64,000 nt of DNA from Magallana gigas (taxonomy: Eukaryota): assembly GCF_963853765.1 (NCBI RefSeq), contig NC_088858.1, forward strand, positions 25,110,001 to 25,174,000, in the 5' to 3' direction. The notes beneath the pieces are model-generated. The model was not told the DNA's origin and made no database searches. It was given only the letters and a program-made list of their open reading frames with translations. Both the position numbers and the translations under genes were made by a program. Of this stretch, positions 6,501-23,725 are shown one piece after another (within the stretch, counting starts at the first letter, position 1; the number at the start of each line of letters is the position of its first letter).

Positions 6501-9500
6501 GTATAGAAGTAATCTGATGGTATCCAACGAAGGCTTGCTGTTTTCAATGAAATCAATTTAAATCTACCTTGAGAGGGTGTCTTGTATTTCAAATAAATAA
6601 GCATTATTGCAACAATATAATTAAAATATGTACCCACTTTGAGCTTGTGCCCGAACCGCGTAAACAGATCAGACTCAAATTTGCATCTTTACAACTTTAC
6701 GAAGTACATGTACATGTATATCATCATAGACCCTGTATTAAATGATTTATTACAGATAATTTTTTTTTAAAATCTTTCTTAAGCGTTTATATTATCGTTA
6801 CACATATTTGTTTCTTTTTCACATGACATGTAGAATAATTGCAAAATATCTAAAGCTAGTCTAAAGTTGGTGATATTGGAATCCATCCCTATATTTTTGG
6901 GATAAATTCGGTTATACTACCAGAACCAGCCTTAACCTTAGTTGTGTTATCCTAATGATAATCGGATTAGCTTTTAATTTAGTCAAACAATCGGGTTTGG
7001 TGTTAGCAATTTATATCGGATTCAGCATCCTTTTTAATCACATTCTTCTTCCACGATGCTGGATCATCAAATGGAATTTCACCCAAACCCATCCATCCTA
7101 TTTCATTTGTGTGTTAGGATTGCATTACTTTGAACGACTGCCAGATTAAGTGAATTTTACCCACTTTGTGCTTGTATGTGATAGGGTATGGCGGTCGCCC
7201 GCTTGGACACGTGGGTTCTCTCCGGGTACTCCGGCTTCTTCCCACATCAATGACCCCCTCGCGCTAACATCCGTGCCAACGAGAGATATTGATATAAGTT
7301 GTAGAACTTGCTTATCAATCGTTGTAAAATAAATAAAGTTCAGTTAAAAAAAAAAGAAAAAAAAAGTGAATTTTACTATTGTCTTTTCATTTCAATGAAC
7401 TTGCTTACTTTGCAGCAAAATTTAAGATGTGTAGTTATTACCATGCACGTGGCTCATATTTGAATTTATTTATTTGGATTCATGTTTTAATAGCTAAAAG
7501 AAAATTTAATAATTATCATAAATTATTAAATTATGTTTACTTGGTAATAAGGAAAACAATCAAAAATTGTTCAACTTTGATTAGAAGGTAATTTTTCTTA
7601 AAGTACCAGTAATAGAGACAGCCAAGTTTTATTTACACCCTTGTCGAGTCTTTGATTAAAATCAGATTAATTTAGTTGCGCATTTGTGTAGTTTCGGTTC
7701 TGTTCTATTCTCCGTCCTGTGTTTTAGCAACACCCCTAACAATCTAAAAACCAAGAACCCGGAAGTTTAAAAAAGGCTTTACAAATAATCTCCAAGTTGA
7801 AATGGTTAATTACCCAACGTAAGTACAGGTATATAATGATTTTAATTTAGATTGCGGCTCAATTTCCCTAGTCTAAGGTTTTTTTTATCAAGTTTCGTTT
7901 TTAAAGAACCGATCACGCGTGCATATCAATTCGTTTAATTGGTAGACTTGGTGTCATTTGAAAAAAAAATTTAATAGTTTTTCAGAGAAAAACTACGAAG
8001 ATTTTCGAAAAACAATTTTTGAAAGCTTGACATACATAAAGTATTTCTAAAAGTTAGAAGTATTTGCTTAGCAAGTTTTTATTTAAGTTAAAACGTTATC
8101 TGAAGATTGAACTGTGTCAATTTTAATGAGCCTTGCAAGGAATCTAAAATAGGAATTTAAAACCGTTCATGGGTTCGATCTTTTGTTAGTGCGTGTCAGT
8201 AAATATTCAATACGGGGGAACGATATACGACAATTTGCACGCATACTTCATATACACATGCATATTTTTGAAACTTTGTGAAATTTAAAGTATAGTGTCT
8301 TTAAATCTATCACCTTAATAAGTGCGAGTATATTTAGGTAGCAAAATTTGTTTTTGTTAATGCAATGGTGCCATCTTCTTGGTCCTTATGAACTAAAACG
8401 AAGTATTTTTTTCATCACGTTTTCTTACCTTTCTATATAAATCATCGGTATAAAGTGTGTGAAAGTAAGTAAACCATCGTTTATTGCTATTCTGTACAAT
8501 ACGTCGGAAGTAGAGCCCAGAATAAAATCCGAGGAATATAATCATAATATATATGATTTATGAGTTGACAGTGCAATATTTGCATGCATAATATTTGTAA
8601 AAAACATTCCTCAAACTCTGCTAATTAATACGTTTTATTTCTTGTTAAAAGTCCCAACAATTTGTATATGCCATACTAATTTACATTAAATATGTAATCT
8701 TTGTCTGAAAAAAAAACTTTAACTCTGCTAAATGATACGTTTTATTTAGTGTTGAAAGACACAGGAATTTGTATATGCACACACTAATTAAAATCATGTA
8801 CGTAATCTTTGTCTGAAAGAAACTTTAACTATGTTAAAATAAAATGTTTGATTTCTTGTTAAAATACCGAGGATTTAATATGTACAATGATAATAATTAT
8901 GCTCAACGCACAAACTGATTCCATGATACTAGACAGATCCAAATTTTTACTCAAAAGCAGATCATAAAAATTGATTTATTTTAATTAGCAGAGAAATTAA
9001 TAAATGATGTAAAAATCAAAAACATGGCTTTTCTCCTGCCAGATATGTTTTTGCAATTACCATTTTCAAAATGTACATTTAGAAATTCATGTCGATTATT
9101 ACACGTTTAACGTAAATTTGATAAGATAGTATATGTTATCATTAAAATTTTTGAAATCGTTCAATTTTCTTTGCATTTCCACACTTTCAGCACTTATAAA
9201 ATACATATAATATAGTTTTTTATTCAATGCTATTTGCATTAAATCTTGTCTTGCTTCACATTTATTTTACAGAAACAAAACCAAAAATATCTCTTTGGTC
9301 ATGTATGGAAACCTTATACAATTATCTTTTTTTTTATTTCAGTAAACTTTGCTCCCAATTCACAGACTTATGCAATGTACGCCGAATGATTCTTTATTTG
9401 ACTTTTTATTTTTCCATTTGGTATACAGGGTGTTGTTCATAACCGAGCAGACTACTTAAATCTGAAAGTAGAACATTCTGGTTTATCCTAATTCCGTTCA

Positions 9501-10547
9501 TTGTTGGGTGACTTCTGATCGATTTTCTTTTGAATTAAAGAATGGATCACTCAGTAGATGTAGATATTGTCTCCTTTTAAATTGTAAAATGAATATAAGC
9601 TCGAAACACATTTACATAATATTTACATTTGATGATCGTGATCGTGAAAAAGATTTTGAATTTATTAGTTCAATAAAACAAATGGGAAAATCAGGAACAA
9701 ATTTAAATAAGTATTAAGCAGCAATACTTTTGATATATAGTAGATGTAAAATTTATTGGTAACTGATAATTTTTAAATAATCTTCCTAAAAAGCTGCTCT
9801 TAAAAGAGCATGTATCTAGAGATCACTATAATACAAGTAAAACACTGAACGCTTTCCAAGAACCCTTGTTTCGTTTTCAGTAACGTTTGAGTATGCAAGA
9901 GGCGGGACATATGTTTTCTATGGTATGAATGATAAAACGAGGCACAATGCAGAATTGCGAAATTTTAAGTAAATTCCAAACCCAGCTAATCCCCTTACCC
10001 CAACAATCGGCTTGATTTGCTGTAACACTGGTACGAAAAAACGGACATTAATTGAGATGTCCAAAAAGGAAAACAGTTTCACTGCGTATTGCTTTCGAAT
10101 CTATTGTCCTTTAAGGGTTTGATACTTGTTTTAAAAAATCGTTCTTAAAACTGATGTTCAAAGCTGTAAACGATATTCGTATTTATTTCTACAACCAGTA
10201 GTTACAATAAAGTCAACTTCCAGAGCAAAAAAAAAAAAAGATAAAGTAGTATTTGATATCCAGATGATAATTTCAATACCCGGTGTGCATTACACTTCGA
10301 GTTTGAACGTTCAATTTTTGCACTGTCTACAAATACACTTGCTATATACAATACAAAATGATAATTGTAAAGAATATTTTACCTTGACAATGGTAAGCAC
10401 TTGGAAGTCCGCTAGTACCACTGAGTCGGCTTTGTATTCATAATGATACTCGTAACCGATTTCAAAATTATATGCACAGGTCTCTCTACGCAAGAAAAGT
10501 AGCCAAAATCCACACAGAGTAAAAAGATAAACAAAACGTCCCATCAT
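573..10547 (-). CDS. Gene A (5' part; continues off the left edge): secreted or membrane giant protein with vitellogenin/LLT-like N-terminal domain; paralog of gene C
   Basis: Phase-consistent GT-AG exon chain: 10383-10544/10547 (MGRFVYLFTLCGFWLLFLRRETCAYNFEIGYEYHYEY, signal peptide), 4065-4152, 3884-3920, 3624-3744 (FEFELSEDGLIKDIGHHKEDHHEVINLKKVLASVFSA), 3266-3317, 2776-2876, 2114-2211, 1854-1900, 859-913, 573-648. The last four match gene C exons in length and sequence. Confidence 0.85.
1661..1756. repeat. Near-perfect inverted repeat (32-bp arms, 32-bp spacer); foldback MITE-like, in a gene A intron
   Basis: atttttgacgtcgtcgtgtcaataaatgccgt (1661-1692) versus acggaatttattgacacgacgacgtcaaaaat (1725-1756), 1 mismatch. 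Confidence 0.8.
4214..4710. mobile_element. Non-autonomous DNA transposon (MITE), Kolobok-like
   Basis: TIRs AGGGGCATGGTCACG and CGTGACCATGCCCCT flanked by TTAA on both sides (4210-4213, 4711-4714); purine-purine termini with a TTAA TSD fit Kolobok. Confidence 0.8.
5020..5130. repeat. Remnant of an interspersed retroelement-like repeat
   Basis: GC-rich island gaggtaggatcaggtgccatggaggagtgagcttcctctgctgaccggtcacacccgccgtg in AT-rich intron; resembles oyster repeats from memory, not verified. Confidence 0.35.
7161..7363 (+). mobile_element. 5'-truncated SINE/LINE-type retroposon with poly-A tail and 13-bp TSD
   Basis: TSD aagtgaattttac at 7148-7160 and 7364-7376; internal gggttctctccgggtactccggcttcttcccaca SINE-like motif; aataaa followed by an A-rich tail. 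Confidence 0.85.
8617..8885. repeat. Degenerate tandem repeat, about 105-110-bp unit, about 2.5 copies
   Basis: Recurring ctctgctaa..atacgttt..atttgtatatgc..gtaatctttgtctgaaa..aaactttaact. Confidence 0.7.
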
Positions 10548-10835
10548 GATTACAAGAGTCCCATTCTGCTACACATCACTTTGGCGACCTGGATACACCA
10601 GGAAGTGCAAAGACCATGCCTGTTAGAATATGCGCATTAAAACCAGTTTTCTATGATTGACGTTTACTGCTTTCATGCGTTGTGCCTTTAAATGGATCAT
10701 AAACTAGGCAGAGGTCGCTCTTTTTTGGACAAGCAGGAAGATTAAATGTGAATTATAATATGTGAAAGAATTCTTGCCTACAGAGGTGTAAATGTGCTAC
10801 TAATGGTGTGCAAAGACTTAATATAGGACTACAGG
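10548..10835. promoter_or_regulatory. Probable bidirectional promoter between genes A and B
   Basis: Divergent ATGs at 10547 (minus) and 10836 (plus), each starting a signal peptide; the 288-bp spacer has a TATA-like aattataatat near 10751. Transcription starts are not known. Confidence 0.6.
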
Positions 10836-13800
10836 ATGGCAGCTGTTCACTTTGCTTTGTCTGTACTTTCTGTTTGTGTGTTTTTGACTTTCGGGTTTGG
10901 CAATGAGATTTTCTCAGAAGAGTACAAAATAGAAGAGGACATGCATGGGAGAGAACTGGTGGTTGCAAGCCGTGGACGGATCCGTAAAACAATCGACTTA
11001 AATGATCAGAGTATCGTAGCTGTGAGCAATAATTTAAATCATTTAGTAAAAACTTATATTCATATTTTTATTCATCAATAAAAAAAGTCATTTACAAATG
11101 TATTTTCTTGACTTTCGTTTTGAAAACGGTCTGACATTGTTTAAATATTTTAGCCTTCGATGTACCTATAATGCTAGTGATATGAATTTTTAATGAATGA
11201 CTAGCAAACGCTAGCATACTAAATGAAATATGCAAATATTATTACACTAGACTCATATTTTTCTGCAGAAAACGATGTGTAAAGATAATACTATAAAGGT
11301 CTCCTTGGCATCAAACATGCATGAAGATGAGTGGAAAATAGGCGACCTTGTTGTAGGAAGTTCTGCCTTGGGCTGCCGTTTGTCCTTCACAAACTCAGAT
11401 GGAGGAGTGTTTGGAAAAATTACTTATTTAAAGACCCAACGAAAGGGCCTTTTATATATAACTGTAGAAAATGCTAGGTAATCCATAATTATGCAGCGAT
11501 TTTATCAATCTTTAAAATAATTAAAACAATCGTATTATATAGCTGTTTAAAAATATGATTGCTAAGTCTATATTTATTTTCCGATTTTTTTTTTCAAAAG
11601 TCCTCTTGATGTTCTAGAAGAGGCCAATATATCACTTCATGTAAAACATCGAAGAACAAAACGCAGCAACACAAATTTTCTCTCAAACATCTTGGATAGC
11701 ATTAATTGGGAAGAAACATCAAACACGACCATACTGTTCAACAAAGACAAAAAACCTTTCTCTATTCTAAAGATGACGAACAACCCGACATTAGATGTAG
11801 GAATACTTGACTCCATAAATACAAGTCCGAACGCAGAGACGCATTTTAACTTCACCTGTACTTCTTGCTTTGGAAAAGTTGAGTTAGCTTATCATCTGTA
11901 AGTATATGTTGAAATCTTACCGTATAAGATGATAAAAAAAAAGAATAAAAATACGGTAATCTGGTCACGCAGTAGCTATAGCTTTTTGTTTAGATATTTT
12001 TTTTTAATGCAATCAATATTGCTTTATTAAATAAGAGCATTATAAAATAAAGAATATTCGTATACATTGTAAGTTACAATATGCCTTCATTTCGATTACA
12101 TAATACTGGTATGTAATATTTAATTGATATATACATGTAATTTGTTAACAATTTGAACAGGGAAATGAGAATAAAGAGAGATGTCGATACAAACAAACCA
12201 ATTGTGAAATCCTACCTCTCTCAAGTGGAAGGCGAGACCACAAACTACTATCAGTTTTCGATCCAATCACACAAAGAACTGACTCTTCTAGTTGACGAGA
12301 AAGTGATGGAAACGGATCCTTTGTTTCTTCATCCAATCACGTTAGCGACATTCAAACGATTTCCACCTTTACAACTTACAATCCGTGTCCAATCGAGCAC
12401 GTACTTAACTGCCAGCATCATTACACATTCTTCTAAAGAGTTTAAGTTTGGGGATACTTTCCAAACGTCAGGGAAGTTTGTTGTGTGTGAGTATTAATTC
12501 AGGTGTTGTTATAACTGTGTCTTTAAAGAATAGTTTTGGGGTTGTTTTTCACCAAATATTAAAATACGATTAGCTTTCATTTTAATTTAAAAAAATAATT
12601 ATTTATCTGAATTAAGAAATCATTTTAGCACTTTGATATAAGTCTTTCTACTTATGATGCATTTTTAAAATAGAAAAAAATGAATGAGTTGAAATCCTAA
12701 TTGAGCATTTTCCCTATTTTTCATTTGTTTGTCAGGAAATTTTTTGCTTTTTTTATTTGAAAAAATACGTCGTATATACCTTTACAGTTCAATAGATATC
12801 TTTATGCCAATTTATTGATCTTGAAGATTACCAATGAAGACTCTTTAACAAATAATCTCCATAAACTGCAGTTTGTTGATTTTTTCCTTGAAAATCAACT
12901 CAATCGTCATTGACAAAATATTGTCATTTTCATTAATGACGAATCAAAACTTACTACAAATAAACTACATCACAAACACAGATTATATGAAAATTTAAAC
13001 GTAATAAAATGACTTATTGAACAGGTACTCCGGGGTCTACCTTGTTAGTTAGAAGCATATGAAAAATGTGGAGATCACCAGGTTAAATGTATACAAAAAT
13101 AGTAAACAACAATGGCAAGGTGATTTCCCTTAATATAAACATATAACACTTATTGTGGTATATACAAAGTTCCGACATACATCCAATGCCTATAAGATTC
13201 CCGCCATCCATAAAAACTTAAACTTTTATTTTTTAAGAGTTAACATCATAGTTTACTTTAACTTTGATATTACAATATGTTTTAGCTAATCAGCATAGTC
13301 AACATAATGGATTACCAACAAATCATATTTCTACATATGATTGGCAGACAAACCACGTTCAAAACGATGCCGTTGAGTCCAATGATTTGTTTTCAATGAG
13401 TTTCAACATTTCCCAACAGGTACAAATGTTCCTTTTTTTAATTATAAATCTACGATCTATTGAATTTATGCAATTTGACAATTTTTGTTTGTTTGACAGA
13501 TTAGTTTAAAACCTTTCATTGAATGGGCAGAACGAGACATTAGACTTGATTTTGGATCACCCTTTACAATAAGGTAAATGAAAAAACCAGTTTGTTTTAT
13601 ATCCGTACAATATTCTTTGATGAAACAAAATAATTTATTTATCTTTCACCAAATTATATTCATATAAATGACATATACATATACTACAATGAGACACCTC
13701 TTTTGTAGGTTACAGCAAGAACTTAATTTAAAGTCAACAGTTTCTGATGTTTCACTGTGTTCCAACGTAGAGTCTCGTTTAACGAGCGCTTTCTCGTCAG

Positions 13801-16800
13801 AGAGAAATTCATTAGTTGTTGATGCTTTTGGTATTCCTATATGGTAAACAAATATCTTTTCTCTTATTAGTACTTCTAATATTTGTAAAGTTTGGTTATA
13901 ACAAATTAACCCAGATAATGATCCATTGTCATTTCGCCACATTCTTTGTTTATTGACATATTTTGTGTTATATCATGTTTTGGTATGCTTAGGGGTGATG
14001 TATCGACACTGACTATGTCTCAGATTTCGAGAGCAGCATTGGATCAACAAACTTTATCCAGAAAATGTCAAGCCAACTGTTTTGAATCTCAGTCCCTTTC
14101 AACATCAATTGATGCATGCGGTGCGCCAGGTAGTCTTGTGCTTCGAAATTCGTCGACATTTTCTTCGTAAGTATTAGACGTTCATTACATTACTGTAACA
14201 TTACATTACATTACATTACATTACTAGTGTATCATTAATGTCTAATTGATACCTAGCTTGCAAGTTTCTTGGCATACTAATCGATATGGACCAAAAAAGT
14301 TGTGTCTTATGTTGACGATTATTATAGGTCATTTGAAAGCAAATTAAAAAAAATAAAGAAAACAATGTTTAAAAAATCGATTATTTTAGTTTGCGGAAGT
14401 TATTTGGAGACACCATCATATTTCTGTCGGAAGAACCAAGTGAATCTTCGTGGTGTGGTCATCCTGGAAATCCATGCTTGGACTGTTCAAATTACATTCA
14501 AGATGACAATGTTTGCTCTGACAGATATGTTACCCCAGAATTAGCAGAAGTGTTAACTAAATTAGCAAAATTTGTTGAAGCGGAATGGCCAGATCGAAAG
14601 CTCTTGATTTTGGAAGCATGGGATGAAGCTACATCAGCACATCCACTTGGTAGTCATGGTAACCAGTCCTTGTTTTACACCGGAAGAGCAGCAAGAGTTG
14701 CATTGAGTAAAAACTTAACATCAAAAGAACCAGAGACTGATCAAAATACATTCCAGAGGTTTACCCAATTACTGCAATGCTCTGATGCTGATTTCTTTGA
14801 CACATACATGAGAAATTCCGTTCTGGACATTTGTGTTTCTGATGAATCGGCCGCTTTTTTCACGAACACCGAAAACAATAGAAAGAAAAGAGCTATTAAA
14901 TCAAACAACATTGTAAAAACAAATACTTGGAGACAAGAGAAAGATAAATATGATGAACAAATTTCTGGTTTAGGTTTGTGTATATATAAAATTTATTTTT
15001 GTGAAATACATTTAGAAGTACACCCTTCCAGCACACTTCTGTATGATCAGTCCGTTATATAAGATTGCCAATTTCTCTTGCAGTAAGTGTTTCGTCAAGT
15101 GGATCTACCCTAAAAGACTATTTTGGAGGAGGAAAGTATTATCCATCAGGAAAAACTGCGATAGATGTTTGTGGAGAAGCTGAAGATACATATAGTATTG
15201 AAAATCTGGATAAAATGCAAAGGTATTTTTAATTTATTTAAAACGTTAAAACACCACGGTTTTTATTTAACAACACTTTTATATTTTTTCTAATGTGTTT
15301 AAAAATATTGTATTTAGATTGCAATATCATTGTAGTCTTCCAAATAGGTATATAACAGCCAGTTTTGATATTGCTTCGCATTTTAATTGTTTAAAAGACA
15401 AATTCAGTATCCACTGGAAAATGTTGCATTCGAGGCCGAAGGAGCTAAGACCTCCTCATGTGGAGCACCAACGAGAGGCTGTAATCAATGTACTCGTTAC
15501 GTGGATGTAGATAATCCATGGGATTGGTGCCTAACGAGGACTATGACCACAAGGGCTGCAACAAGACTTCATCGCTTAGCCAGACTTGTAGAAGAGGAAA
15601 CAAAGTCAGGTCGGAAATTATTTCTAAAATCTCTATTTTTCGGGGCATTCACGTAGTACACAGCAAAACACAATAACAAACCGATATATTACTTTTACTT
15701 TAAGGCGGTTCAAGTTTAAGTTTGGCGGATGAAGAGTTAGGAATTTGTCGATCAGCTATGGTGATGTACGAAACCCTTGAGACGTGTATAGAAAAAATGC
15801 CGAGCTCTACTACTAATAAAGAATCAAAGTGTGTAAGTAATTGATTTGAAGAATCAAACAAAGAGTATGATTATTTTTCTTTATTTAAGAGAATTGCAGT
15901 TTTTATAAATAACATAGTTCAATTTTTTTTCTTCGAATTTATGTCTTTTTAAGGAAGAAGTCTTTTCTGATTTTCGACTTGTCAAACGTAAATTTCATTA
16001 ATTGTTCATTAAATCAAGAATCAAGAAAATTAAGAAAAGGAAATTAAAATAGTATATTTTTCTTTCTTTTTTACTATCATACAACTTGGCATAGAAAAAG
16101 TAATCAATGTTTAGAATCTAACAAGGTCTATATTTTTGGCGTAATATTGGCGTAGGAAAGTATCGCATGTTTCGCAATTCAGAATTGCTGCAGATAACTG
16201 AGTCTGTTTTGGCATTTTAAAAACAATAACTTTAATGTTGGATTTTTTTACTTATGTGAACTAATGATATGATACTTGGGTTTCAGAAAATTTGATTTGC
16301 CTATCAAATTACATTTTAATAAGCTTTTTAAAGCGCCCATTCTACACTTTGATTTTTATGAAATAATCACTAAAATAAGATTTTCTTTCTTATTAAATGG
16401 TCAATACATTAGCTTTTCTGTCAATTTATTTCTTTGTATAAAGTCTTCATATAAAACAATAATCTTCAAAATTTTAGAAAACTAGAGGAAATGCAGGCTA
16501 ATAAATATCAATTTCAGTATAAATATTTGTTCCAATTCAGTAGTATAAGCTGATAGACATTCTGATGTTCTATCATTTCATTGAAAAATAGAATGTTCAA
16601 ATCTTAAATAAAGATCTACAGAACTACAAAGAGCTACACTTATTTTTATCATCCTTTACGTTGAGGAAAAAGGTAGTGACTTTGACCTGACTTTTATGCA
16701 AAAACAAAAAGGTAAAATTTGATTAATCTGATAGAATCATTTGGTAATATGATCTGTTTGACTGTGTCAAAATTTCATGTATTTCTTATTATAAAAAGTA

Positions 16801-19800
16801 TGTTTGATAACAAGAAGACTCCTTCCTTAAATTAAATGTGAATGCAAAGCTCAGAAGAGATTTTCGTCATTCTGTTTAAAAATGTAAATCATATAATTAA
16901 TACTAATTAAAAGTTTTTTATGCCTCCTATAAAACCTTATTCTTTTTCCTTTGTATATAATCATTCATTTATGTTAGTACGATTGCATGATGGACGCCCG
17001 TTGCTGTTACGGAAACGATAATATTGGCTGCATAAGAAATGAATGTTCCGGAGATGAGAGTTCTAGTGTGTGGACATCAATAGCTTGTTCAGGTATTCAG
17101 TCGTTTCAATAAATACTACCTTGAAAAAAATTGGACAGAAGAACGTTACAACTTCACTTTCACTGTATTTTGCAGCTGTGCTTTTTTTTTGGGGGGGGGG
17201 GGTGAATATTAACAATATAGTTTGAAAATTTGGATACTGACTATGTTTTCGACAAGTATATATTTCTTTTCTTTTTACTTTTTATACAGAACTAAATCCT
17301 TTTTTAAGTGATGTTACCATACCAACAACACCAGGTATATTTTAGACTTTTTATCCCTTTAAAGCATCCCTTAGATATACTTAAGCAGTAAATGTCGTAC
17401 ATATAATTTCATTTGAATTTAATTTCTAGCATGTAACGATGGTGATAGTTCCAAGATGATCCTGTATGGAAATGTATGCGGAGGTAATATTATAATATAC
17501 GATGACTTTTTGATATATGCAATTGTTGATGATGACATTTTTTAGATTAAATAGCGGCATTATCTTTTATTACTTTACAGAACCAGTTTAAAGACAAAAA
17601 TGACTGTAAACAATTGATAATTGATTAGATAATTCCAAAAAATAATTATTTATTGAAAGCATTTGAGAGTAACCTATCGATACTTGGTTAATAAGATACG
17701 TAATATACCCTACGTTAAAAAAAGTTTTCATACATTTTTGTTTTAAGAAAATCGAATTTTAATAGGTCAGTTGGTTCAATTACTTATGCATCATTTATTT
17801 CAATAGGCGATCCTTGCCAATTTTTTACTGGAAAAGAGTATCACCTTTTGTTAAAAGTGGTTCTAATATTCGAAGTCTGTTCTGGCAAATGGGATCAGAC
17901 AAAAATCGACCAAGACATTCGGAATCTGAATACCGGAGAAAGTAATTTGATGACTTTTTTGTCTTCTTGCATGGGTAGTGACAACACAATTCTAAAACTT
18001 CACTACCCTGTTCCAAATGACCCAACAATCGGTAAGTTTTATTTAGATGACTAAATTGCATATCATACAATCTGTAGCCCTTAAGATAAAGTGTGCGTAA
18101 GTCTAAGACATTTTTTAAGTAGGACTTGATACATTCTTCGACTTAAGTCCGCAACTAGGAAGTGCTTATATGAAGCTAGAACAATTTACACAAAACTTAG
18201 ACAGCCTTCGAGAACGACTGTTATTTGTCAAAACAAACAAAAAACAAGAATGGACAAACTGCATCAACCTCAATCGATTGCTTAGTGATATACACAAAGG
18301 TTAGGTACATCTACAATACACTCATTTCACATTGAATTTTGTGTATGCATAGGCGTCGGAACCGGGGGGTGGGGGTGGGGTTCAGTTAGACATAAACCAT
18401 AATGATATTTTTTTTTGTTTTGGGGGTTTGTTTTTGCCTATCAAGATTTCTGACAAGCCCCCCCCCCCTTTTTTAATTTGCTTCCGACGCCACTGCTACA
18501 TGTATGTGCCATAATTAATAAGGTTAAGTACATCTACAATATACCTATGTCACCTTCAATTTTGTGTATATACCATTTAAATGACTTCTAAACCCCCCCC
18601 CCCCCCCACCAACCAATCCAATATCAAAGATACTTACCAGTTGTATCTATATTTAAATTGTATATTAACTTAAATAATTATCACCGATACCATCGAAGTC
18701 GATTAGGAAAATGAACACTTCAGTAATGACTTTTTAACATAAGAATAATGTTGGCTTTATGTTACGGACGAAGTACGTAGGTTCTAAGATTCAGCGTAAG
18801 TTTAAAGTATGACCCTACTTATGTCAAAATCTTGGCATGTTTTGTGTAATGAGCCCCAGACTGACAAAACACTGATTTGTTGTGCACAATTAACTTATTG
18901 AATGTTTAAGTATTTTTAGTCGCTATGTATATTTTTCAATCAGTATCCATTTATTATGCTGTTGCTCATAAATAAGGTTTAAAGATAAAAGTTTAAAAAA
19001 GATTTGATACACAATATTTAAAAGAATGCATGTAAATTACAGGAATAGGGTTTAGCCTTCGTTCATCGGAAAAGAAAGATCTGCTGTTAAAAATTTTACC
19101 AAACCTAGACTATGACCTCATAATGGAAGGCAAGCAATCCTTAACAAAAGAACAAGCACTTTACTTGTATGATGTAAGTTCTGTTATTTCAAATTTAAAA
19201 CAATAGATGTTTGGTATCGTTATTGCTTACTGTTATTCCAATTACTTTATTTTTGCGTTCTATGTCCATTTTTAGAAAACTATGAGGCGATACTACATAA
19301 AGACTATGAACAGCATTGTCCCATTTAAATCATTTATTCACTTGGACACTGCTACAAAAATTGCATTAGTTAATGCAAACTATAGAGGAGAGTTTCCATC
19401 GAAACTAAGGAAAAGGTTTAACACCGCTGTACAGGGTGGTCAGTGGGCTAATGCTGCTAATATTTATCTAAGTCATCCAGATTACAAGAGAAACAAATGT
19501 GATACCACTGGCTATGGGAGTATTTGTACCAGAATGACATGGAATGCGGAGCAGTTTAATAAACTTGCCAAAAAACAAGGTTGTATGATGTTATTATTGT
19601 AACAAATTTTTTGAGTGTTTAATTAAGAATGTATGTATTTACAAAAAACTGATTAACAATTGTTTTTTATATTAGTGAAGGTTTTAAAAAGAGAAAGTTC
19701 TTCGGCTCTTCAAAATGTTGGAAGGTATATACCTTGCATTTCATGTGGATAGTAAAGAGATTTGCTTTTGTAGAAAAAAACATACATGTTATATATTCAA

Positions 19801-22558
19801 AATCCTTCTTTTATTATTGACATTACAGATCGCTCAAATTAACTCTAACTCCTGGAGTGTCTCTGAGCACAAGTACACTTGCTAATCTGGCTGTCATCGC
19901 AGGATTTGATCACGTGACTAAGGAATCGGATCACATCGTGGCAAGTGTTCGACCAGCTAAAGGTGTAAATAGCGTTTTAGTAAACTATCCAAATGTGAAT
20001 ATGCACGAAACCGAACCCCCTGTCGATAACATGGTTGAGTATGAAATTCCAGCAGAGGCAGACTATAGCCTGACTTATCCTTTACTTCTGGATGGATTTA
20101 ATGACTCTATAAGACTTTCGGACTGTTACAAAATAGCTGATTTAAAATCTAATAAATTTAGGTATTTTAGATTCGATCCAACACTTTTAGAATGTATGGA
20201 GGAAGCAAGTAGTCACTACACTGAGTGTATTGCAGTAGAAAGCGGTTCTGGATATCGAGTCAGATCTGAAAACAATAGGAACATTGATAGTAGGCATTCT
20301 GAGGAGAAATGGCGTTTTTCAGTTGGTCAGGCTGTGGAAATTGGTAAAGGCAAAACTCTAGAAGAACTAAAGCTTCTCGGATTAACAGTTATAAGATCAT
20401 GCGTTCAGAATTTGATCCGCAAGAGGTTGATACTTGGAATTGGTGCGCACGAAGACAAACTTTATGTGGACGTACGGGAATCTTCACTAGCAGCGGAGTT
20501 TGTTAAAGTTTGGGAGGATGGATCATCTGACTTGTACACGTATCTTAAAGACATAGAAAACGGCTTCAAAAATGGTAACTAGAGAACATTTTCATAATTT
20601 ACTTCAAAACAAATTCACGAAAGAAAATTTTATTTAAGATATGGGTTTTGTCATTTGGTCATTTAATTGTGTATCCTGTCTAGGAGGTGCTTTTATTGAA
20701 CCAACAAACAAAACACGTGCATGTCAACCTTCACCGCTTGGAAAGAACTCATACTACATCAAATATTCTAATGAAGGGTAAGTGATCGCAAAGTTTTAGT
20801 AATACACTTTTATGAAAATATTTTTTAGAATTGTGTATCATTTAAACATTGACTTATAGAAGATAAAACAATACGCCATTGTCAAAGGCAAAATTTATTT
20901 CTTTTAGATCATGTAGTGCAGATACAGGGTTTTCTTCACTGTGTTCATCAACAAAATCTGAAAGACAAAAAGCTGCCGCAGATCTACTGAAACGTCTAGA
21001 TGAAGTGATAGGAAACGGACCATTAGATAAAGCATCACTTAGAGAAAAAGTCAACAATTGTTTAGTGAATCTGTGCGGAGGATGCATTGGCAAAGGTACA
21101 ATTCATAATCTGGAAAATGCAATTGATTTACAAATCTTTTTTATGAGTTTTGTAAACCAAATACAGACAGAAGGAGATGTAAGTAAAACATAAATCATAC
21201 TGTTATCAAGAACCTAATATTTCATATTTTTCTATTATAAAGGAAAAATCTGGAGGGATAAGACGATAGCGTGTTTTGACTTCGTTACCTACTTTTTGGA
21301 TGGGTCTTCTGTACCATTCCCAAATTTAAGAAATTCTGGAGCATTCTTCAATACAGAGAATACTAAATCTGAAGTTCATTCGTTGGCTTGTCATGATGGA
21401 AGTGCCTGCATTGAAAATGTTCAGCTTCATTCTTTACTTCGTACGAATATTTAACGTTTTAAAATAATAATAAAGATATTTTTTTTTATTTTTAATCCAC
21501 GCACACAAAGATTGTTGAACAACATTTACAAACACCATTCCTAGTTAAACAAATGTCATAATGTTTCTCGCTCTAATTGAATATTTAGTGAAACATTTTT
21601 TATGAATGAAAGTCACAGTTTAATCTATTTCTAAAAACAGCATTGAGAACTTTACTCTAACATGGATAATACTCAAACGATGAATGTTACACATGATATT
21701 GTTATCAAGAAGTATGCAAAGCTGATGCCTGACGAAAAAGTCAATTTTTCAGAGAAAATGATCATGGTAATGATACTATTCCAAAATAAACTAAAAGAGA
21801 TTAGAAATATTTATCATAGGAGCTCCGTCATGCTATAAGGATACAAATATTGTGATACTGATTTTTTTTATTTCAGAAGAAACATTGACGACCAAGTACA
21901 AACCAGACTCATCCCAAACTAACGAAGAACTAGTTTACGATCCAATGGACAATCCCTCCCCATTGCTCAATATTTTAGAACAAGAAATGGCCATGCGTGT
22001 ATCTGGGAACGTTTCAGTTTATATTGAAAACAATGGAGATATCTCAAGGTTGAATCAAATATTAAAGGTATGTAGAATATTAGTCAAAAATGAAAAGTTG
22101 TAAATACCTTGATTGTTTGTAAGTGATGCAAATCAATCGAGAAACGTGCAAACGTTATTAACTTAAAAAATTAAAGCTGAAAAATACACAATCATATAAG
22201 TACGCACAAACTCGCATACCATACACATATAGACAGGTGCATGACGATAAACAGAGCACTTTTAAAACGATTATTATGTTTTCAGATTCTTATGGTCTTC
22301 AACACAAAGGTCACCAATGTTCATTATCATTTGACAAATTCTGTGAGGAAAAACCAAGTTGTGGGTGCTGTTCAACGTAAAATAGAAAGATGGGCGACGT
22401 CGACGTGTCCGGACATCTCCCGTGTAACGGTCGCTCCTTTCACGGTCTCTGAAATATCTCACGAAAGACACAAACGAAGTATAGATAACAGCCAAGACAG
22501 GAATTTCGCAAAGCAACTAAGAAACAATTGGGAATTGGAGTGGCTTTCAAAAACTTAA
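10836..22558 (+). CDS. Gene B: secreted multidomain protein of about 1734 aa (signal peptide, N-terminal region, Hedge 1, split Hedge 2 with inserted GH24-like lysozyme, M15A-like peptidase domain, Cys-rich C-terminus); no HINT, no TM
   Basis: 25 GT-AG exons with consistent phases, total 5205 nt: 10836-11021, 11269-11477, 11601-11897, 12161-12486, 13286-13419, 13500-13573, 13709-13843, 13993-14166, 14390-14967, 15084-15222, 15398-15609, 15705-15832, 16978-17092, 17290-17334, 17430-17483, 17807-18031, 19043-19173, 19276-19579, 19676-19724, 19829-20574, 20684-20777, 20908-21095, 21243-21440, 21877-22067, 22286-22558 (TAA). Confidence 0.88.
14080..14850 (+). other. Hedge (Hedgehog N-terminal signalling, M15-fold) domain 1 of gene B
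   Basis: CGAPGSLVLRNSSTFSSLRKLFGDTIIFLSEE...DRYVTPELAEVLTKLAKFVEAEWPDRKLLILEAWDE...SLFYTGRA aligns by eye with Shh [76 protein letters not shown]. Confidence 0.9.
14183..14223. repeat. (CATTA)n microsatellite
   Basis: cattacattactgtaacattacattacattacattacatta in a gene B intron. Confidence 0.85.
15084..15609 (+). other. Hedge domain 2 of gene B, N-terminal half
   Basis: YPSGKTAIDVCGEA...NVAFEAEG-(Cys-rich insert)-TRTMTTRAATRLHRLARLVEEE matches the Hedgehog IFKDEE..DRLMTxRCKxKLNxLA segment, then breaks off at a phase-1 donor. Confidence 0.75.
17807..19579 (+). other. Phage/T4-type (GH24-like) lysozyme domain of gene B over exons 17807-18031, 19043-19173 and 19276-19579
   Basis: LKLHYPVPNDPTIG|IGFSL...LDYDLIMEGKQSLTKEQALYLYD and ALVNANYRG...AVQGGQWANAANIYL...RMTWNAEQF resemble T4 lysozyme LRLKIYKDTEGYYTIGIG and ALINMVF..MLQQKRWDEAAVNL. 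Confidence 0.7.
18352..18491. mobile_element. Small MITE-like element with G-tract and C-tract arms
   Basis: ggcgtcggaa..G-tract versus C-tract..ttccgacgcc inverted ends, lying between two diverged copies of about 50 bp of ggtta(g/a)gtacatctacaata..attttgtgtat. Confidence 0.55.
19676..19952 (+). other. Hedge domain 2 of gene B, C-terminal half
   Basis: VKVLKRESSSALQNVGR|SLKLTL...LANLAVIAGFDHVTKESDHIVASVR versus Shh [45 protein letters not shown]. Confidence 0.8.
20110..20480 (+). other. Peptidase M15A / M15_3 (YcbK-like) domain of gene B, Zn ligands substituted
   Basis: LSDCYKIADL..FRFDPTLLECMEEA..IAVESGSGYR..N..RFSVGQAVEI..LGIGAHEDKLYVDVR follows the M15A pattern LS.hF..D..L..L..R..SGYR..N..S.H..G.A.D..GIG.Y..HvD.R. 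Confidence 0.65.
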
Positions 22559-23725
22559 TTATATTATCCAATACTAAATTAAAGATATTTCTATTAGAGT
22601 TTATCTTTGGGGATTTGCTAAGCAATTTAGGGGTAGTGTGAAAATTATTTTATTTAACTCTGTTTATTATGTTTTAAATGGAACGATTAAATTGTTTTTA
22701 TATTCCCACAGGGGAAACAAATTAATCCTTTTTTTAAACAATTATAATCTAGCTTTATATGTCAAAATGTCATCTTTAATAAAACTAGTCCTAAGTGCAA
22801 ACCCCTAACAAATCATAATTTTGCATTCGATTTCAGTACTTCATTAGATCTGGTTTACATCATTCTGATATCTACTTCTAACAATTGTTACGTTATAAAA
22901 ACTAATTGGAGTATTACATCAATCATTTTCTGTGATAGTGACTATATCTTTTAATATTTAAAAAGAATCTCAATGCAATATTTTTTTTTTATTTCATCGA
23001 ATAGTTTGTGTATATACTTGACAACATGAATTTATTACGTTTCTTTCGAGTTGCGGACACTGTGAAACTAATGAAATTACTCGATTTCCCACGGATTTGT
23101 GAATATTTCAATCAAAGTTTTCTTTAAAGCTCATAATATTTATTCGTTTGGATTTTTTTTTAAATTCTACATAACGAAAACAAAGTGTGATTACTGATAA
23201 ATTGTTGAAGTGTTGACTATTTAATTTGAATACTTACTTAAATTTTATTATGTTCAAATACATTAAAACAATTATCAGTGCACTACAGTATGATTATTTT
23301 TTGCATGTAACTCAGAATGTTTTTAATCTATTTACACGTGTATGTACTGCTGACAATAGCTAGTACTGTTTTGAAAAAACACTTTTCCATTGATGTGGAG
23401 GACCCTGAGGGGTGTCTTGCATCTAATATTTTTTTTAGTTTTACATAACGAAAGTATGTAGAAAATAGGCGACTATACGTGTTACCAAATTCTGAAATTT
23501 AAAAAAGTGGAAAAGAAATCAAAGAGCATCAATGTAAGTGGATATTGTAAAATTGTCAATTTCAAGAGCAGGAAGATAAGAAAAAATTGTTTTGTCAATC
23601 AAATAAATAGTCAAATACTTGTATATTTTGATGAATAATATTTGAAATTTTAAAAAATTCAACGAATATTGATAAAATCACAATACATGATATTTGCATT
23701 TAAGTCTATTTTACGTTCAGTTTAA

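What the first reader, a model, noticed from the sequence alone, without database searches (positions are those of the whole stretch)
10836..22558. Secreted HINT-less protein combining two Hedge domains, a phage-type lysozyme and an M15A-like peptidase
Seen: an intact 25-exon ORF with a signal peptide and four domains of peptidoglycan-hydrolase ancestry in one chain, with no HINT, VWA or TM. Known: the Hedge domain shares the M15 (D-Ala-D-Ala peptidase) fold, and described Hedge proteins are Hedgehog (Hedge+HINT) and Hedgling (Hedge+VWA+cadherins+TM). I know no described Hedge + GH24 lysozyme + M15A architecture, though automated annotations may list it as uncharacterised or hedgehog-like. Inference: a cell-wall-binding immune, mucosal or matrix protein, and a natural link between Hedge and bacterial-type M15 domains.
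Basis: partly seen in the sequence, partly recalled or inferred. Interest (0 to 1): 0.88.

Follow-up and report, generated by a model that had tools for sequence, protein, structure and literature searches.

The report
Oyster Hedge protein with nested lysozyme-like domain
This is a real, expressed oyster gene for a large secreted protein built from three hedgehog/M15-type domains, with a phage-lysozyme-like domain inserted inside one of them; all four have lost their usual catalytic residues, so it most likely binds rather than cuts.

Summary
**Observation: confirmed.** Window 10836-22558 (+) holds 25 GT-AG coding exons, giving a 1,736-aa protein with a signal peptide. I found no Hint, VWA or transmembrane segment. 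A 5.5-kb transcript contig and RNA splice joints link all the domains in one mRNA.

**Interpretation: largely right, with three changes.**
1. **The lysozyme-like domain is nested, not a fourth bead on the chain.** It belongs to a 334-codon, seven-exon cassette (exons 12-18) that splits the second Hedge domain.
   - Both flanking introns are phase 1.
   - A scallop orthologue has one 374-nt phase-1 intron at that spot.
   - The modelled halves of the split domain still superpose on Sonic hedgehog (Z 12.3).
   - The cassette is present in Saccostrea and Ostrea, and its lysozyme-like exons in the pearl oyster Pinctada. It is absent from scallop, abalone, unionid and cephalopod homologues.
2. **All four domains have lost catalytic residues.**
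   - Neither Hedge domain keeps the zinc triad.
   - The M15A-like domain matches the *Streptomyces* DD-peptidase 1lbu (Z 9.0) and bacterial "Peptidase M15A" models (E 2e-9), but it also lacks the triad.
   - The lysozyme-like domain (hhalign 96-97%) has Pro where T4 lysozyme has Asp20.
3. **The Hedge + M15A-like + C-terminal core is old.** It occurs in molluscs, brachiopod, starfish, amphioxus, a sponge and a choanoflagellate.

**Function (inferred).** Most likely a convertase-processed, non-catalytic binder of cell-wall or matrix glycans. I found no paper describing this architecture.

The parts
10686..22711 (+). Transcribed span of the gene (5' UTR from 10686, ATG at 10836, stop ending at 22558, 3' UTR to at least 22711)
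   Evidence: The mRNA contig L001 aligns in 25 blocks. Coding exons, all GT-AG: 10836-11021, 11269-11477, 11601-11897, 12161-12486, 13286-13419, 13500-13573, 13709-13843, 13993-14166, 14390-14973, 15084-15222, 15398-15609, 15705-15832, 16978-17092, 17290-17334, 17430-17483, 17807-18031, 19043-19173, 19276-19579, 19676-19724, 19829-20574, 20684-20777, 20908-21095, 21243-21440, 21877-22067, 22286-22558.
10836..10901 (+). Signal peptide (aa 1-22, MAAVHFALSVLSVCVFLTFGFG)
   Evidence: It is the only hydrophobic stretch in the protein: Kyte-Doolittle 19-residue windows above 1.5 start only at residues 1-8. The cleavage site was judged by eye.
10902..14390 (+). N-terminal region, aa 23-512 (exons 1-8 and the first base of exon 9), fold unknown; conserved in bivalves, gastropods and cephalopods
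   Evidence: It aligns with scallop, abalone and Octopus/Argonaut homologues. There is no Pfam hit and no relation to the M15A-like domain by hhalign. The ESM Atlas search gave only sub-threshold rows.
11650..11664 (+). Conserved R-x-K-R site 1 (RRTKR, aa 149-153)
   Evidence: An RxK/RR motif sits at the same place in oysters, scallops, a unionid, abalones and Batillaria. Cleavage there is inferred.
14391..15085 (+). Hedge domain 1 (aa ~513-707, exon 9), without the zinc triad
   Evidence: Pfam HH_signal matches at E 3.9e-10 on the exon and 3.5e-14 on P0060. Against the oyster's own hedgehog, SLHYEGRAVDI...HIHCS reads SLFYTGRAARV...LDICV, so the triad positions are His to Phe, Asp to Arg and His to Ile.
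14880..14894 (+). Conserved R-x-K-R site 2 after Hedge 1 (RKKRA, aa 676-680); the transcript allele reads IKKRA
   Evidence: Polybasic sites occur at this position in oysters, scallops and abalones.
15107..15608 (+). Hedge domain 2, N-terminal half (aa ~715-823; exons 10-11)
   Evidence: It aligns with the contiguous Hedge 2 of scallop, abalone and starfish homologues. It forms one Hedge fold with the C-terminal half in the model.
15609..19578 (+). Inserted cassette, aa 824-1157 (coding exons 12-18 at 15705-19579; 1,002 nt = 334 codons; both flanking introns phase 1)
   Evidence: The gap between the Hedge 2 halves is 296-334 aa in six oyster proteins and 21-43 aa in most other homologues. The scallop locus L008 has one 374-nt phase-1 intron at this spot. 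The cassette is single-copy in this genome. All its introns are confirmed by RNA joints.
15609..17919 (+). Cysteine-rich first part of the cassette (aa 824-975, 13 Cys), fold unknown
   Evidence: Cys counts are. There is no Pfam hit, and this part of the model has low confidence.
17920..19557 (+). T4/GH24-type lysozyme-like domain (aa ~976-1150; exons 16-18)
   Evidence: The top six PDB hits by phmmer are T4-type gp5 lysozymes (E 0.4-1.2). The first 20 phage tblastn rows lie on genes that are, or match, annotated lysozymes (best E 0.05). hhalign against three phage lysozymes gives 96-97% probability, score 68 against 13 +/- 2.8 (maximum 24) for column-shuffled controls. Pfam PF00959 and PHROGs gave no hit.
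17980..18027 (+). Positions equivalent to the T4 lysozyme triad: Glu11 is Asp996 (17980-17982), Asp20 is Pro1005 (18007-18009), Thr26 is Thr1011 (18025-18027)
   Evidence: From the alignment with three phage lysozymes, with coordinates. The Glu11 position is Asp here and in three orthologues (P0057, P0058, P0059) and Glu in two (P0056, P0001). The Asp20 position is Pro in all six.
19579..19952 (+). Hedge domain 2, C-terminal half (aa 1158-1215; exon 19 and the start of exon 20)
   Evidence: GRSLKLTL...LANLAVIAGFDHVTKESDHIVASVR aligns to GRAVDITT...[26 protein letters not shown] of the oyster hedgehog. There is a weak HH_signal match to profile positions 120-159. The model superposes on ShhN across model residues 1..474.
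19953..20685 (+). M15A-like LAS-fold domain (aa 1216-1423, exon 20), without the His-Asp-His zinc triad
   Evidence: The AlphaFold2 model has pLDDT 91.6. VIA-align places 1lbu first at Z 9.0, rmsd 2.6 A over 118 residues, followed by hedgehog (Z 6.0-6.2) and M15 endolysins, VanX and VanY. AFDB matches to bacterial 'Peptidase M15A C-terminal domain' models reach E 2.3e-9 at TM 0.65-0.68. At the three triad positions the commonest residues among 51 relatives are His (30), Glu (26) and Tyr (41).
20686..22555 (+). C-terminal cysteine-rich region (aa 1424-1736, exons 21-25), fold unknown; conserved from the sponge and choanoflagellate members to molluscs
   Evidence: It aligns across 25 homologues with about 10 invariant or near-invariant Cys. 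There is no PDB, Pfam or Atlas match.
22466..22480 (+). Conserved R-x-K-R site 3 (RHKRS, aa 1707-1711), 26 residues before the C-terminus
   Evidence: The site is conserved in oysters, scallops, abalones and Batillaria. Cleavage there is inferred.

Best explanation
**What it is (shown).** The locus is one expressed 25-exon gene for a 1,736-aa secreted, cysteine-rich protein. It belongs to an old, unstudied family that joins Hedge domains to an M15A-like LAS-fold domain and a conserved C-terminal domain, with no Hint domain.

**Lineage-specific change (shown).** In true oysters and the pearl oyster, a seven-exon, 334-codon cassette sits in a phase-1 intron in the middle of the second Hedge domain. 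It encodes a cysteine-rich segment plus a T4/GH24-type lysozyme-like domain. The lysozyme-like domain therefore loops out between a helix and a strand of a Hedge fold that still closes.

**How it probably works (inferred).**
- None of the four hydrolase-derived domains keeps its canonical catalytic residues. The zinc triad is absent from Hedge 1, Hedge 2 and the M15A-like domain, and the lysozyme-like domain has Pro where T4 lysozyme has Asp20.
- The protein would then act as a non-catalytic binder. The lysozyme-like groove would hold a glycan strand and the LAS-type clefts would hold a peptide or an acidic group. The ligand could be bacterial peptidoglycan or a host matrix or mucus glycan.
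- It would be cut at three conserved R-x-K/R-R sites by proprotein convertases into separate fragments.

**Confidence by part.** Gene model, architecture and nested insertion about 0.9. Loss of canonical catalysis about 0.7. Non-catalytic binding of some glycan or cell-wall ligand about 0.5. Peptidoglycan as that ligand about 0.3. The 0.55 given for this explanation is the value for the statement taken as a whole.
For: - **Gene and transcript:** (25 GT-AG exons, intact ORF; RNA joints; one contig runs from Hedge 1 to the M15A-like exon).
- **Secreted:** (signal peptide only, 50 Cys, 12 N-x-S/T sequons).
- **Hedge domains:** (Pfam; ShhN Z 12.3, rmsd 2.5 A, 116 residues spanning model residues 1..474).
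- **Insertion:** (296-334 aa against 21-43 aa; alignment; 1,002 nt, phase 1 on both sides; scallop has a single phase-1 intron there).
- **Spread of the cassette:** (two Pinctada exons match cassette exons 16 and 18; conserved in Saccostrea and Ostrea at 59-69%, like the rest of the protein).
- **Lysozyme-like domain:**
- **M15A-like domain:**
- **Lost catalytic residues:**
- **Convertase sites:**
- **Family range:**
Against: - No binding or activity data exist, and the ligand is a guess.
- Pfam and PHROGs do not recognise the lysozyme-like domain. The AlphaFold2 model of the cassette is poor (pLDDT 25-50 over most of it), so the lysozyme fold rests on sequence profiles only.
- An acidic residue (Asp or Glu) persists at the Glu11 position. 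The M15A-like domain keeps conserved His, Glu and Tyr in many members. Unusual chemistry is therefore not excluded.
- The family also occurs in animals where an anti-bacterial role is not obvious, so the core function may have nothing to do with peptidoglycan.
- Convertase cleavage is inferred from motifs alone.
Confidence: 0.55

Rival explanations
1. It is a hedgehog-like extracellular signal or matrix-bound morphogen. Convertase cleavage after Hedge 1 would replace Hint autoprocessing and release Hedge-containing fragments that bind Patched-, Ihog- or proteoglycan-type partners. The lysozyme-like insert would be a lineage-specific add-on.
For: - Both Hedge domains have a true Hedge fold and sequence.
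- A polybasic site sits just after Hedge 1, roughly where hedgehog is cut, and it is conserved.
- Read by eye from the Hedge 1 sequence, with Shh numbering recalled from memory, several Shh calcium-site acidic residues look retained (FLSEE..., ...SDR..., LEAWDE).
- The family spans many animals, as expected of a developmental or matrix protein.
Against: - Hedge 1 lies about 490 residues from the signal peptide, so there is no N-terminal Cys for palmitoylation.
- There is no Hint domain and therefore no sterol addition.
- The zinc centre, which Roelink and colleagues report as needed for Shh matrix association (paper titles and abstracts), is absent.
- The genome has a separate canonical hedgehog gene.
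Confidence: 0.2
2. It is an active, bifunctional cell-wall hydrolase (muramidase plus peptidase) used for antibacterial defence or for digesting filtered bacteria.
For: - All recognisable domains descend from peptidoglycan hydrolases.
- An acidic residue is kept at the Glu11 position and Thr26 is invariant.
- Some M15A-like domains keep His and Glu at two of the three triad positions.
- Oysters are known to use lysozymes for defence and digestion (paper PMC3020801, abstract).
Against: - The Asp20 position is Pro in all six orthologues, and the Glu11 position varies between Asp and Glu.
- The His-Asp-His zinc triad is missing from Hedge 1, Hedge 2 and the M15A-like domain.
- None of these domains reaches the Pfam threshold for the enzyme families.
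Confidence: 0.12
3. The lysozyme resemblance is chance or convergence, and the cassette is simply a lineage-specific helical spacer of no known fold.
For: - Pfam PF00959, PHROGs and a profile-against-PDB search are all negative.
- Single-sequence E-values are weak (0.05-1.2).
- The AlphaFold2 model of this part has low confidence and gave no lysozyme match.
- The three phage sequences used for hhalign were picked from the query's own hit list.
Against: - The weak hits are not scattered. The top six PDB hits and the first 20 phage hits are all lysozymes, from unrelated phages.
- hhalign scores 68 over 108-116 columns, against 13 +/- 2.8 (maximum 24) for shuffled columns and 14 for the reversed profile.
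- The signature P-T-I-G-I-G with invariant Thr, and the downstream helices, align in order.
Confidence: 0.05
4. The 25-exon model is an artefact that fuses two or more neighbouring genes.
For: The domain mix is unusual, and there are long introns (1,145 and 1,011 nt) around the cassette.
Against: - A single 5,514-nt transcript contig encodes the whole ORF.
- Splice joints in four runs link every exon from 9 to 20.
- Orthologous full-length models exist in Saccostrea and Ostrea.
Confidence: 0.02

Closest known systems
Hedgehog proteins (Hedge + Hint/Hog), including the oyster's own hedgehog gene at G000:C5:46170505-46178777
   Same: - It has a secreted Hedge (HH_signal) domain with the same fold: ShhN and fly HhN match at Z 12.2-12.3.
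- It carries motifs such as EAWDE, GR(A/S) and LAxLAxxAGFD.
   Different: - There is no Hint/Hog domain, so no autoprocessing or sterol addition.
- It has two Hedge domains, and they lie deep inside a 1,736-aa chain.
- The zinc triad is lost.
- A cysteine-rich loop (WCG...C..C...C) is inserted in the N-terminal half of each Hedge domain.
- A polybasic site follows Hedge 1 in place of the self-cleavage site.
Hedgling (Hedge + VWA + cadherin/EGF repeats + transmembrane segment; sponges, cnidarians, choanoflagellates)
   Same: - It is a Hint-less Hedge protein.
- Its Hedge domain has an incomplete DD-peptidase motif. The Nematostella hedgling sequence printed in Roelink's preprint reads EGRALRL, with Arg where hedgehog has the zinc-binding Asp. 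This family likewise has Lys, Arg, Glu, Gln or Thr there.
- The family reaches back before animals.
   Different: - There are no VWA or cadherin domains and no membrane anchor.
- The Hedge domains are internal, not N-terminal.
- They are followed by an M15A-like domain and a distinct C-terminal domain.
Peptidase family M15A (Streptomyces albus zinc D-Ala-D-Ala carboxypeptidase, PDB 1lbu; bacterial 'Peptidase M15A C-terminal domain' and DUF882/YcbK proteins)
   Same: - 1lbu is the best structural match: Z 9.0, rmsd 2.6 A over 118 residues.
- The match to bacterial models covers the whole domain: TM 0.65-0.68, E 2e-9.
- The motif order is similar (YR..S.N...H...G.A.E...G.G...Y.D.R).
   Different: - The His-Asp-His zinc ligands are not conserved. 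At those positions the commonest residues among 51 relatives are His (30), Glu (26) and Tyr (41), and there is a 6-residue insert between the first two.
- It falls below the Pfam threshold.
- It is eukaryotic, intron-bearing and part of a multidomain secreted protein.
T4-type (GH24) phage lysozymes, and the phage-type lysozymes that heterodont and palaeoheterodont bivalves gained by horizontal transfer (Ren et al. 2017, PMC5303276)
   Same: - It shows profile-level homology over about 110-170 residues, including the PTIGIG strand with the Thr26 equivalent and the C-terminal helices.
- It is present in a bivalve.
   Different: - Identity to phage lysozymes is only about 22-25%.
- The Glu-x8-Asp-x5-Thr triad is broken (Asp or Glu, then Pro, then Thr).
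- It is spread over several exons and preceded by a cysteine-rich segment.
- It is nested inside another domain.
- It occurs in oysters, where Ren et al. reported no GH24 gene in C. gigas.
- No free-standing relative was found.
Lophohog (Burglin 2008)
   Same: It is a lophotrochozoan 'hedgehog-related' family.
   Different: Lophohog has a Hog domain with a novel N-terminus and no Hedge domain. This protein is the reverse.

Membership tests
Hedgehog (Hh) ligand family | Hedge (HH_signal, PF01085) domain | tested here: met
   Pfam gives E 3.5e-14 in two stretches. Hedge 2 superposes on ShhN at Z 12.3.
Hedgehog (Hh) ligand family | C-terminal Hint/Hog autoprocessing domain | tested here: not met
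   There is no Hint or Hog hit in P0060 or any homologue scanned. The oyster 'GGGKYYP' motif after Hedge 1 is not conserved outside oysters.
Hedgehog (Hh) ligand family | Zinc triad His-Asp-His of the Hh/DD-peptidase motif | tested here: not met
   In the alignment with the oyster's own hedgehog, Hedge 1 has Phe, Arg and Ile at the triad positions and Hedge 2 has Gln, Lys and Val.
Hedgling | N-terminal Hedge followed by VWA, cadherin/EGF repeats and a transmembrane segment | tested here: not met
   Pfam finds no VWA or cadherin domain. There is no hydrophobic segment beyond the signal peptide.
GH24 / Phage_lysozyme (PF00959) | Sequence membership at the family's curated threshold | tested here: not met
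   There is no Pfam hit on the exons, on P0060:935-1180, or genome-wide in six frames. PHROGs gave none.
GH24 / Phage_lysozyme (PF00959) | Remote homology to T4-type lysozymes | tested here: met
   hhalign gives 96-97% probability, score 68 against a shuffled maximum of 24. The top PDB and phage hits are all lysozymes.
GH24 / Phage_lysozyme (PF00959) | Catalytic Glu11 / Asp20 / Thr26 triad | tested here: not met
   The window protein has Asp996, Pro1005 and Thr1011. Pro is invariant in the six orthologues.
GH24 / Phage_lysozyme (PF00959) | Two-lobed T4 lysozyme fold | tested here: inconclusive
   The AlphaFold2 model of the cassette has pLDDT 25-50 over most of its length and gave no lysozyme match. 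The alignment behind it was shallow: six sequences.
Peptidase M15A (MEROPS) / LAS enzymes | LAS fold closest to M15A | tested here: met
   1lbu matches at Z 9.0, and 12 of the top 13 rows are LAS-fold proteins. Bacterial 'Peptidase M15A C-terminal domain' models match at E 2.3e-9.
Peptidase M15A (MEROPS) / LAS enzymes | His-x(3-6)-Asp ... His zinc ligands | tested here: not met
   The third ligand position is Tyr in 41 of 51 relatives. The first is His in 30 of 51 and the second is Glu in 26 of 51, with altered spacing.
Peptidase M15A (MEROPS) / LAS enzymes | Pfam Peptidase_M15_3 / M15_4 at the curated threshold | tested here: not met
   One of 51 family domains hits PF08291, at E 0.015. The genome scan found nothing in this window. 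A separate PF13539 domain is significant only in the choanoflagellate member.
Lophohog | Hog domain with a lophotrochozoan-specific N-terminus | tested here: not met
   There is no Hog domain.

The most novel reading that the evidence does not exclude
This family may be a third, pre-animal class of Hedge-domain proteins, alongside hedgehog and hedgling. It would preserve the context in which the Hedge domain arose: a secreted array of M15-type DD-peptidase domains that had already lost catalysis and worked as sensors of cell-wall or matrix ligands. True and pearl oysters would then have rebuilt a complete, non-lytic peptidoglycan receptor by slotting a lysozyme-derived glycan-binding domain into a loop of one Hedge domain. 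That would be a natural counterpart of the engineered T4-lysozyme loop fusions used in structural biology.
Probability: 0.2. Interest if true: 0.8.

Novelty: new variant of a known kind. Interest (0 to 1): 0.66.

Why it matters
**Origin of hedgehog.**
- Two kinds of eukaryotic Hedge-domain protein are discussed in the literature I could search: hedgehog and hedgling.
- Where hedgehog's signalling domain came from is still debated, with bacterial transfer set against descent through hedgling (Roelink).
- This family puts Hedge domains in one chain with M15A-like domains, and it runs from a choanoflagellate and a sponge to amphioxus and molluscs. It is a concrete set of sequences for testing those scenarios.

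**Domain evolution.** The oyster gene is a clean example of a whole domain inserted into another domain through a symmetric phase-1 exon cassette, with the pre-insertion state still visible in scallop.

**Bivalve biology.**
- It reveals a cryptic GH24-derived module in a lineage reported to lack phage-type lysozymes.
- It offers a candidate non-lytic cell-wall sensor in a filter feeder of commercial importance.

If the protein turns out to be an ordinary matrix component, the evolutionary points still stand, but the immune angle falls away.

Tried and rejected
**Negative searches**
- Pfam scans of single exons and of P0060 pieces for Phage_lysozyme and Peptidase_M15_3 gave nothing.
- Six-frame genome scans gave no PF00959 anywhere and no PF08291 in this window.
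- The six-sequence cassette profile found nothing in the PDB.
- PHROGs gave nothing for the lysozyme-like part.
- ESM Atlas searches on the N- and C-terminal regions gave nothing usable.
- hhalign of the N- and C-terminal regions against the M15A-like domain showed no relation.
- The C-terminal profile found nothing in the PDB.
- Two searches for free-standing relatives of the cassette found only oyster fragments, or nothing.
- Earlier findings of this scan near the locus: none.

**Spurious or weak results**
- The PDB 'Cake' designed-repeat hits come from one short motif, EKWRF..G.A.E, repeated in the designed proteins.
- Foldseek against the PDB with the M15A-like model gave no match at E <= 0.001, although LAS enzymes were scattered through the list.
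- The AlphaFold2 model of Hedge 2 plus the cassette is too poor in the cassette to test the lysozyme fold.

**Ideas dropped**
- Lophohog: it has a Hog domain, not a Hedge domain.
- A Hint relic after Hedge 1 ('GGGKYYP' against 'GGCFPG'): the motif is not conserved outside oysters.

**Not run**
- A complex prediction; no protein-protein binding claim is made.


Full report
**Where the window comes from.** The window is AT-rich (GC about 0.26-0.35) and belongs to a 564-Mb, 29-contig genome. Public runs holding the stretch include one labelled 'oyster metagenome'. The nearest named orthologues are from Saccostrea and Ostrea, at 65-69% identity. I therefore infer an ostreid oyster of another genus.

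**Gene model.**
- Stop-free segments on the + strand between 10.8 and 22.6 kb look like exons.
- A library-wide HMMER search with the largest exon found a 1,490-aa Saccostrea protein, P0001.
- Searching with P0001 returned P0060, a 1,736-aa protein known only from transcript assemblies (313 member sequences).
- P0060 maps to the window exon by exon at about 99% identity.
- Its 5,514-nt contig L001 aligns to 10686-22711 in 25 blocks.
- After junction refinement every intron is GT..AG. The window's own CDS is 5,211 nt = 1,736 codons plus stop, and differs from P0060 at 19 residues.

**RNA support.**
- Laying three RNA contig runs and one raw polyA run on 14373-20372 gave GT..AG joints for every intron from exon 9 to exon 20.
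- Raw-read first mates lay almost entirely on the minus strand over the exons, as expected for a + strand mRNA in a stranded library.
- One 5,183-nt contig runs from 14390 to 20027.
- No joint skipped exons 12-18 (all).
The only hydrophobic segment is the N-terminal signal peptide.

**Hedge domains.**
- Pfam recognises HH_signal on exon 9 (E 3.9e-10) and in two stretches on P0060 (E 3.5e-14). It finds nothing else, so there is no Hint or VWA.
- The genome has a separate canonical hedgehog gene on contig 5.
- Aligned against that hedgehog, Hedge 1 and Hedge 2 keep the framework motifs (EAWDE, GR(A/S), LAxLAxxAGFD).
- They have lost the zinc ligands. SLHYEGRAVDI...HIHCS reads SLFYTGRAARV...LDICV in Hedge 1 and ALQNVGRSLKL...HIVAS in Hedge 2.

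**The nested insertion (the main new point).**
- Homologues from scallops, abalones, a unionid, Batillaria and Octopus/Argonaut align to oyster residues about 1-820 and about 1140-1736, but not to the stretch between.
- The gap between the two halves of Hedge 2 is 296-334 aa in six oyster proteins. It is 21-43 aa in most other homologues (alignment).
- In several of those homologues Pfam matches the second Hedge domain as one continuous stretch, profile positions 71 to 158-159.
- In the oyster, the C-terminal end of that domain reappears at the start of exon 20 (weak HH_signal 120-159; LANLAVIAGFDHVTKESDHIVASVR).
- The extra 334 residues are encoded by exons 12-18: 1,002 nt in all, with phase-1 introns on both sides.
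- At the orthologous point, the Mizuhopecten gene (L008) has a single 374-nt phase-1 intron. The exons on either side are conserved: the small '...YGNVGR' exon corresponds to oyster exon 19. This is the pattern expected for a symmetric exon cassette dropped into an intron.
- An AlphaFold2 model of residues 745-1220 is poor overall (pLDDT 54.5) but fair in the two Hedge halves.
- That model superposes on human ShhN and fly HhN at Z 12.2-12.3, rmsd 2.5-2.6 A, over 108-116 residues with 25-27% identity. The alignment runs from model residue 1 to 474. The two halves are therefore modelled as one Hedge fold with the cassette looping out.
- The cassette is conserved in Saccostrea and Ostrea at 59-69% identity, like the rest of the protein.
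- Two exons in the pearl oyster Pinctada match cassette exons 16 and 18 and lie upstream of its M15A-like exon.
- The cassette is single-copy in this genome.

**Is the cassette lysozyme-like?**
- Against: Pfam, PHROGs and a six-sequence profile against the PDB are all negative.
- For, three lines agree:
  - phmmer against the PDB lists T4-type gp5 lysozymes as six of its seven hits (E 0.4-1.2).
  - tblastn against 2.3 Gb of phage genomes gives 27 weak hits. The first 20 lie on genes that are, or match, annotated lysozymes or endolysins, in Nostoc, Aeromonas and Yersinia phages (best E 0.05, 83% coverage).
  - hhalign of the oyster alignment against three of those phage lysozymes gives 96-97% probability. 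The score is 68 over 108-116 columns, against 13 +/- 2.8 (maximum 24) for 100 column-shuffled controls and 14 for the reversed profile.
- Caveat: the phage sequences were chosen from the query's own hits, and no confident structure backs the fold.
- In the joint alignment the PT(I/V)G.G strand with Thr26 is invariant. The Glu11 position is Asp in the window protein and three orthologues and Glu in two. The Asp20 position is Pro in all six. The canonical Glu-Asp-Thr triad is therefore broken.
- Ren et al. 2017 reported no GH24 gene in C. gigas, so this diverged module had escaped notice.

**The M15A-like domain.**
- An alignment of 51 relatives gave a confident model of residues 1215-1430 (pLDDT 91.6).
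- Foldseek against the PDB was not significant.
- The exhaustive structural aligner put the *Streptomyces albus* zinc DD-peptidase 1lbu first: Z 9.0, rmsd 2.6 A, 118 residues. This enzyme is the M15A type example (from my own knowledge of MEROPS).
- Next came hedgehog N-domains (Z 6.0-6.2), then M15-type endolysins, VanXY, VanY, VanX and LdcB.
- In AlphaFold DB the first non-family matches are bacterial 'Peptidase M15A C-terminal domain' and DUF882 proteins. They cover the whole domain at E 2.3e-9 and below, TM 0.65-0.68.
- Sequence support is weak: VanY-type enzymes at E 0.6, and one of 51 members hitting PF08291 at E 0.015.
- The zinc triad is not kept. At the three positions the commonest residues are His (30 of 51), Glu (26 of 51) and Tyr (41 of 51).
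- By contrast Arg1285, Arg1288, Tyr1316, Gly1340, Asp1388 and Arg1390 are nearly invariant.

**Other features.**
- The N-terminal 490 residues and the C-terminal 313 residues are conserved but match nothing known.
- Three R-x-K/R-R motifs are conserved across bivalves and gastropods: near residue 150, just after Hedge 1 (about 676) and 26 residues from the C-terminus. This suggests convertase processing, which is an inference.
- The transcript allele has Ile in place of Arg676.

**The family.**
- Members are called 'uncharacterized' or 'Hedgehog N-terminal signalling domain-containing protein'.
- They occur in oysters, scallops, unionids, Solemya, abalones, Batillaria, Octopus and Argonauta, Lingula, starfish and amphioxus.
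- They also occur in the sponge Oscarella (with Trypsin and PLAT domains) and in a choanoflagellate.
- The choanoflagellate member has C2, a Pfam-significant Peptidase_M15_4, the M15A-like domain and then Hedge.
- A shorter form of about 900-950 aa has M15A-like, Hedge, M15A-like and the C-terminal domain. This genome has a shorter relative of this kind on contig 3.
- Burglin 2008 noted an Oscarella EST with a Hedge domain but no Hog or VWA domain. It may belong to this family.
- In the searchable literature I found only hedgehog, hedgling, bacterial Hh/DD-peptidases and Lophohog.

**Reading.**
- Shown: the gene, its transcript, the domain folds, the nested insertion and its phylogenetic limits, and the loss of canonical catalytic residues.
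- Inferred: that the protein is a convertase-processed, non-catalytic binder of a glycan, peptide or acidic ligand, possibly peptidoglycan.
- The main rival is a hedgehog-like matrix or signalling role. An active hydrolase is less likely.
- I rate it a new variant of a known kind: a third architecture of Hedge-domain protein, with an unusual domain-in-domain. Interest 0.66.

Noticed in passing
window 15950-16970 (intron 12): RNA contig depth is far higher here than on the exons (up to about 1,900 against about 230). Reads lie on both strands, and many loose ends and variants appear. This looks like a multi-copy repeat or transposon fragment inside the 1,145-nt intron, not part of this mRNA.
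   Followed up: no
window 25796-47976, minus strand: A run of very long open exons on the opposite strand encodes Big_9/cadherin-like, fibronectin type III and PAN domains. It is probably one large extracellular protein gene next door.
   Followed up: partly
L007 5083-8993 (G000:C3:35195082-35198992): A second, shorter family member lies on another chromosome. Its M15A-like exon is 31% identical to the one in this gene, and the Saccostrea 901-aa protein P0010 maps across it at 27-45% identity.
   Followed up: partly
G000:C5:46170505-46178777 (loci L005, L006): This is the oyster's canonical hedgehog gene, with the intact SLHYEGRAVDI...HIHCS zinc motif. I used it as the internal reference.
   Followed up: yes
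window 14880-14882 (codon 676): The window allele reads RKKR after Hedge 1. The transcript allele P0060 reads IKKR, which removes the P4 arginine of the putative convertase site. In all, 19 amino-acid differences separate the two alleles.
   Followed up: no
window 19173-19281: Four raw reads in run X21 join 19173 to 19281 with five extra letters (AAATT), instead of the usual 19173-19276 joint. This is probably an indel allele at the acceptor of intron 17 rather than alternative splicing.
   Followed up: no
window 14183-14224 (intron 8): A (CATTA)n microsatellite with 8 copies.
   Followed up: no
P0044 (choanoflagellate Craspedida sp. UC1) residues 708-1551: C2, a Pfam-significant Peptidase_M15_4 (E 3.4e-10), the M15A-like domain and Hedge lie in one 2,145-aa chain. 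The Oscarella member P0043 adds Trypsin and two PLAT domains.
   Followed up: partly
L009 (Pinctada imbricata) 6667-10252 against 27786: About 17.5 kb separates the pearl oyster's lysozyme-like exons from its M15A-like exon. The annotated partial protein P0003 has about 200 residues between them that have no oyster counterpart. This could be an extra insertion or a mis-predicted model.
   Followed up: no
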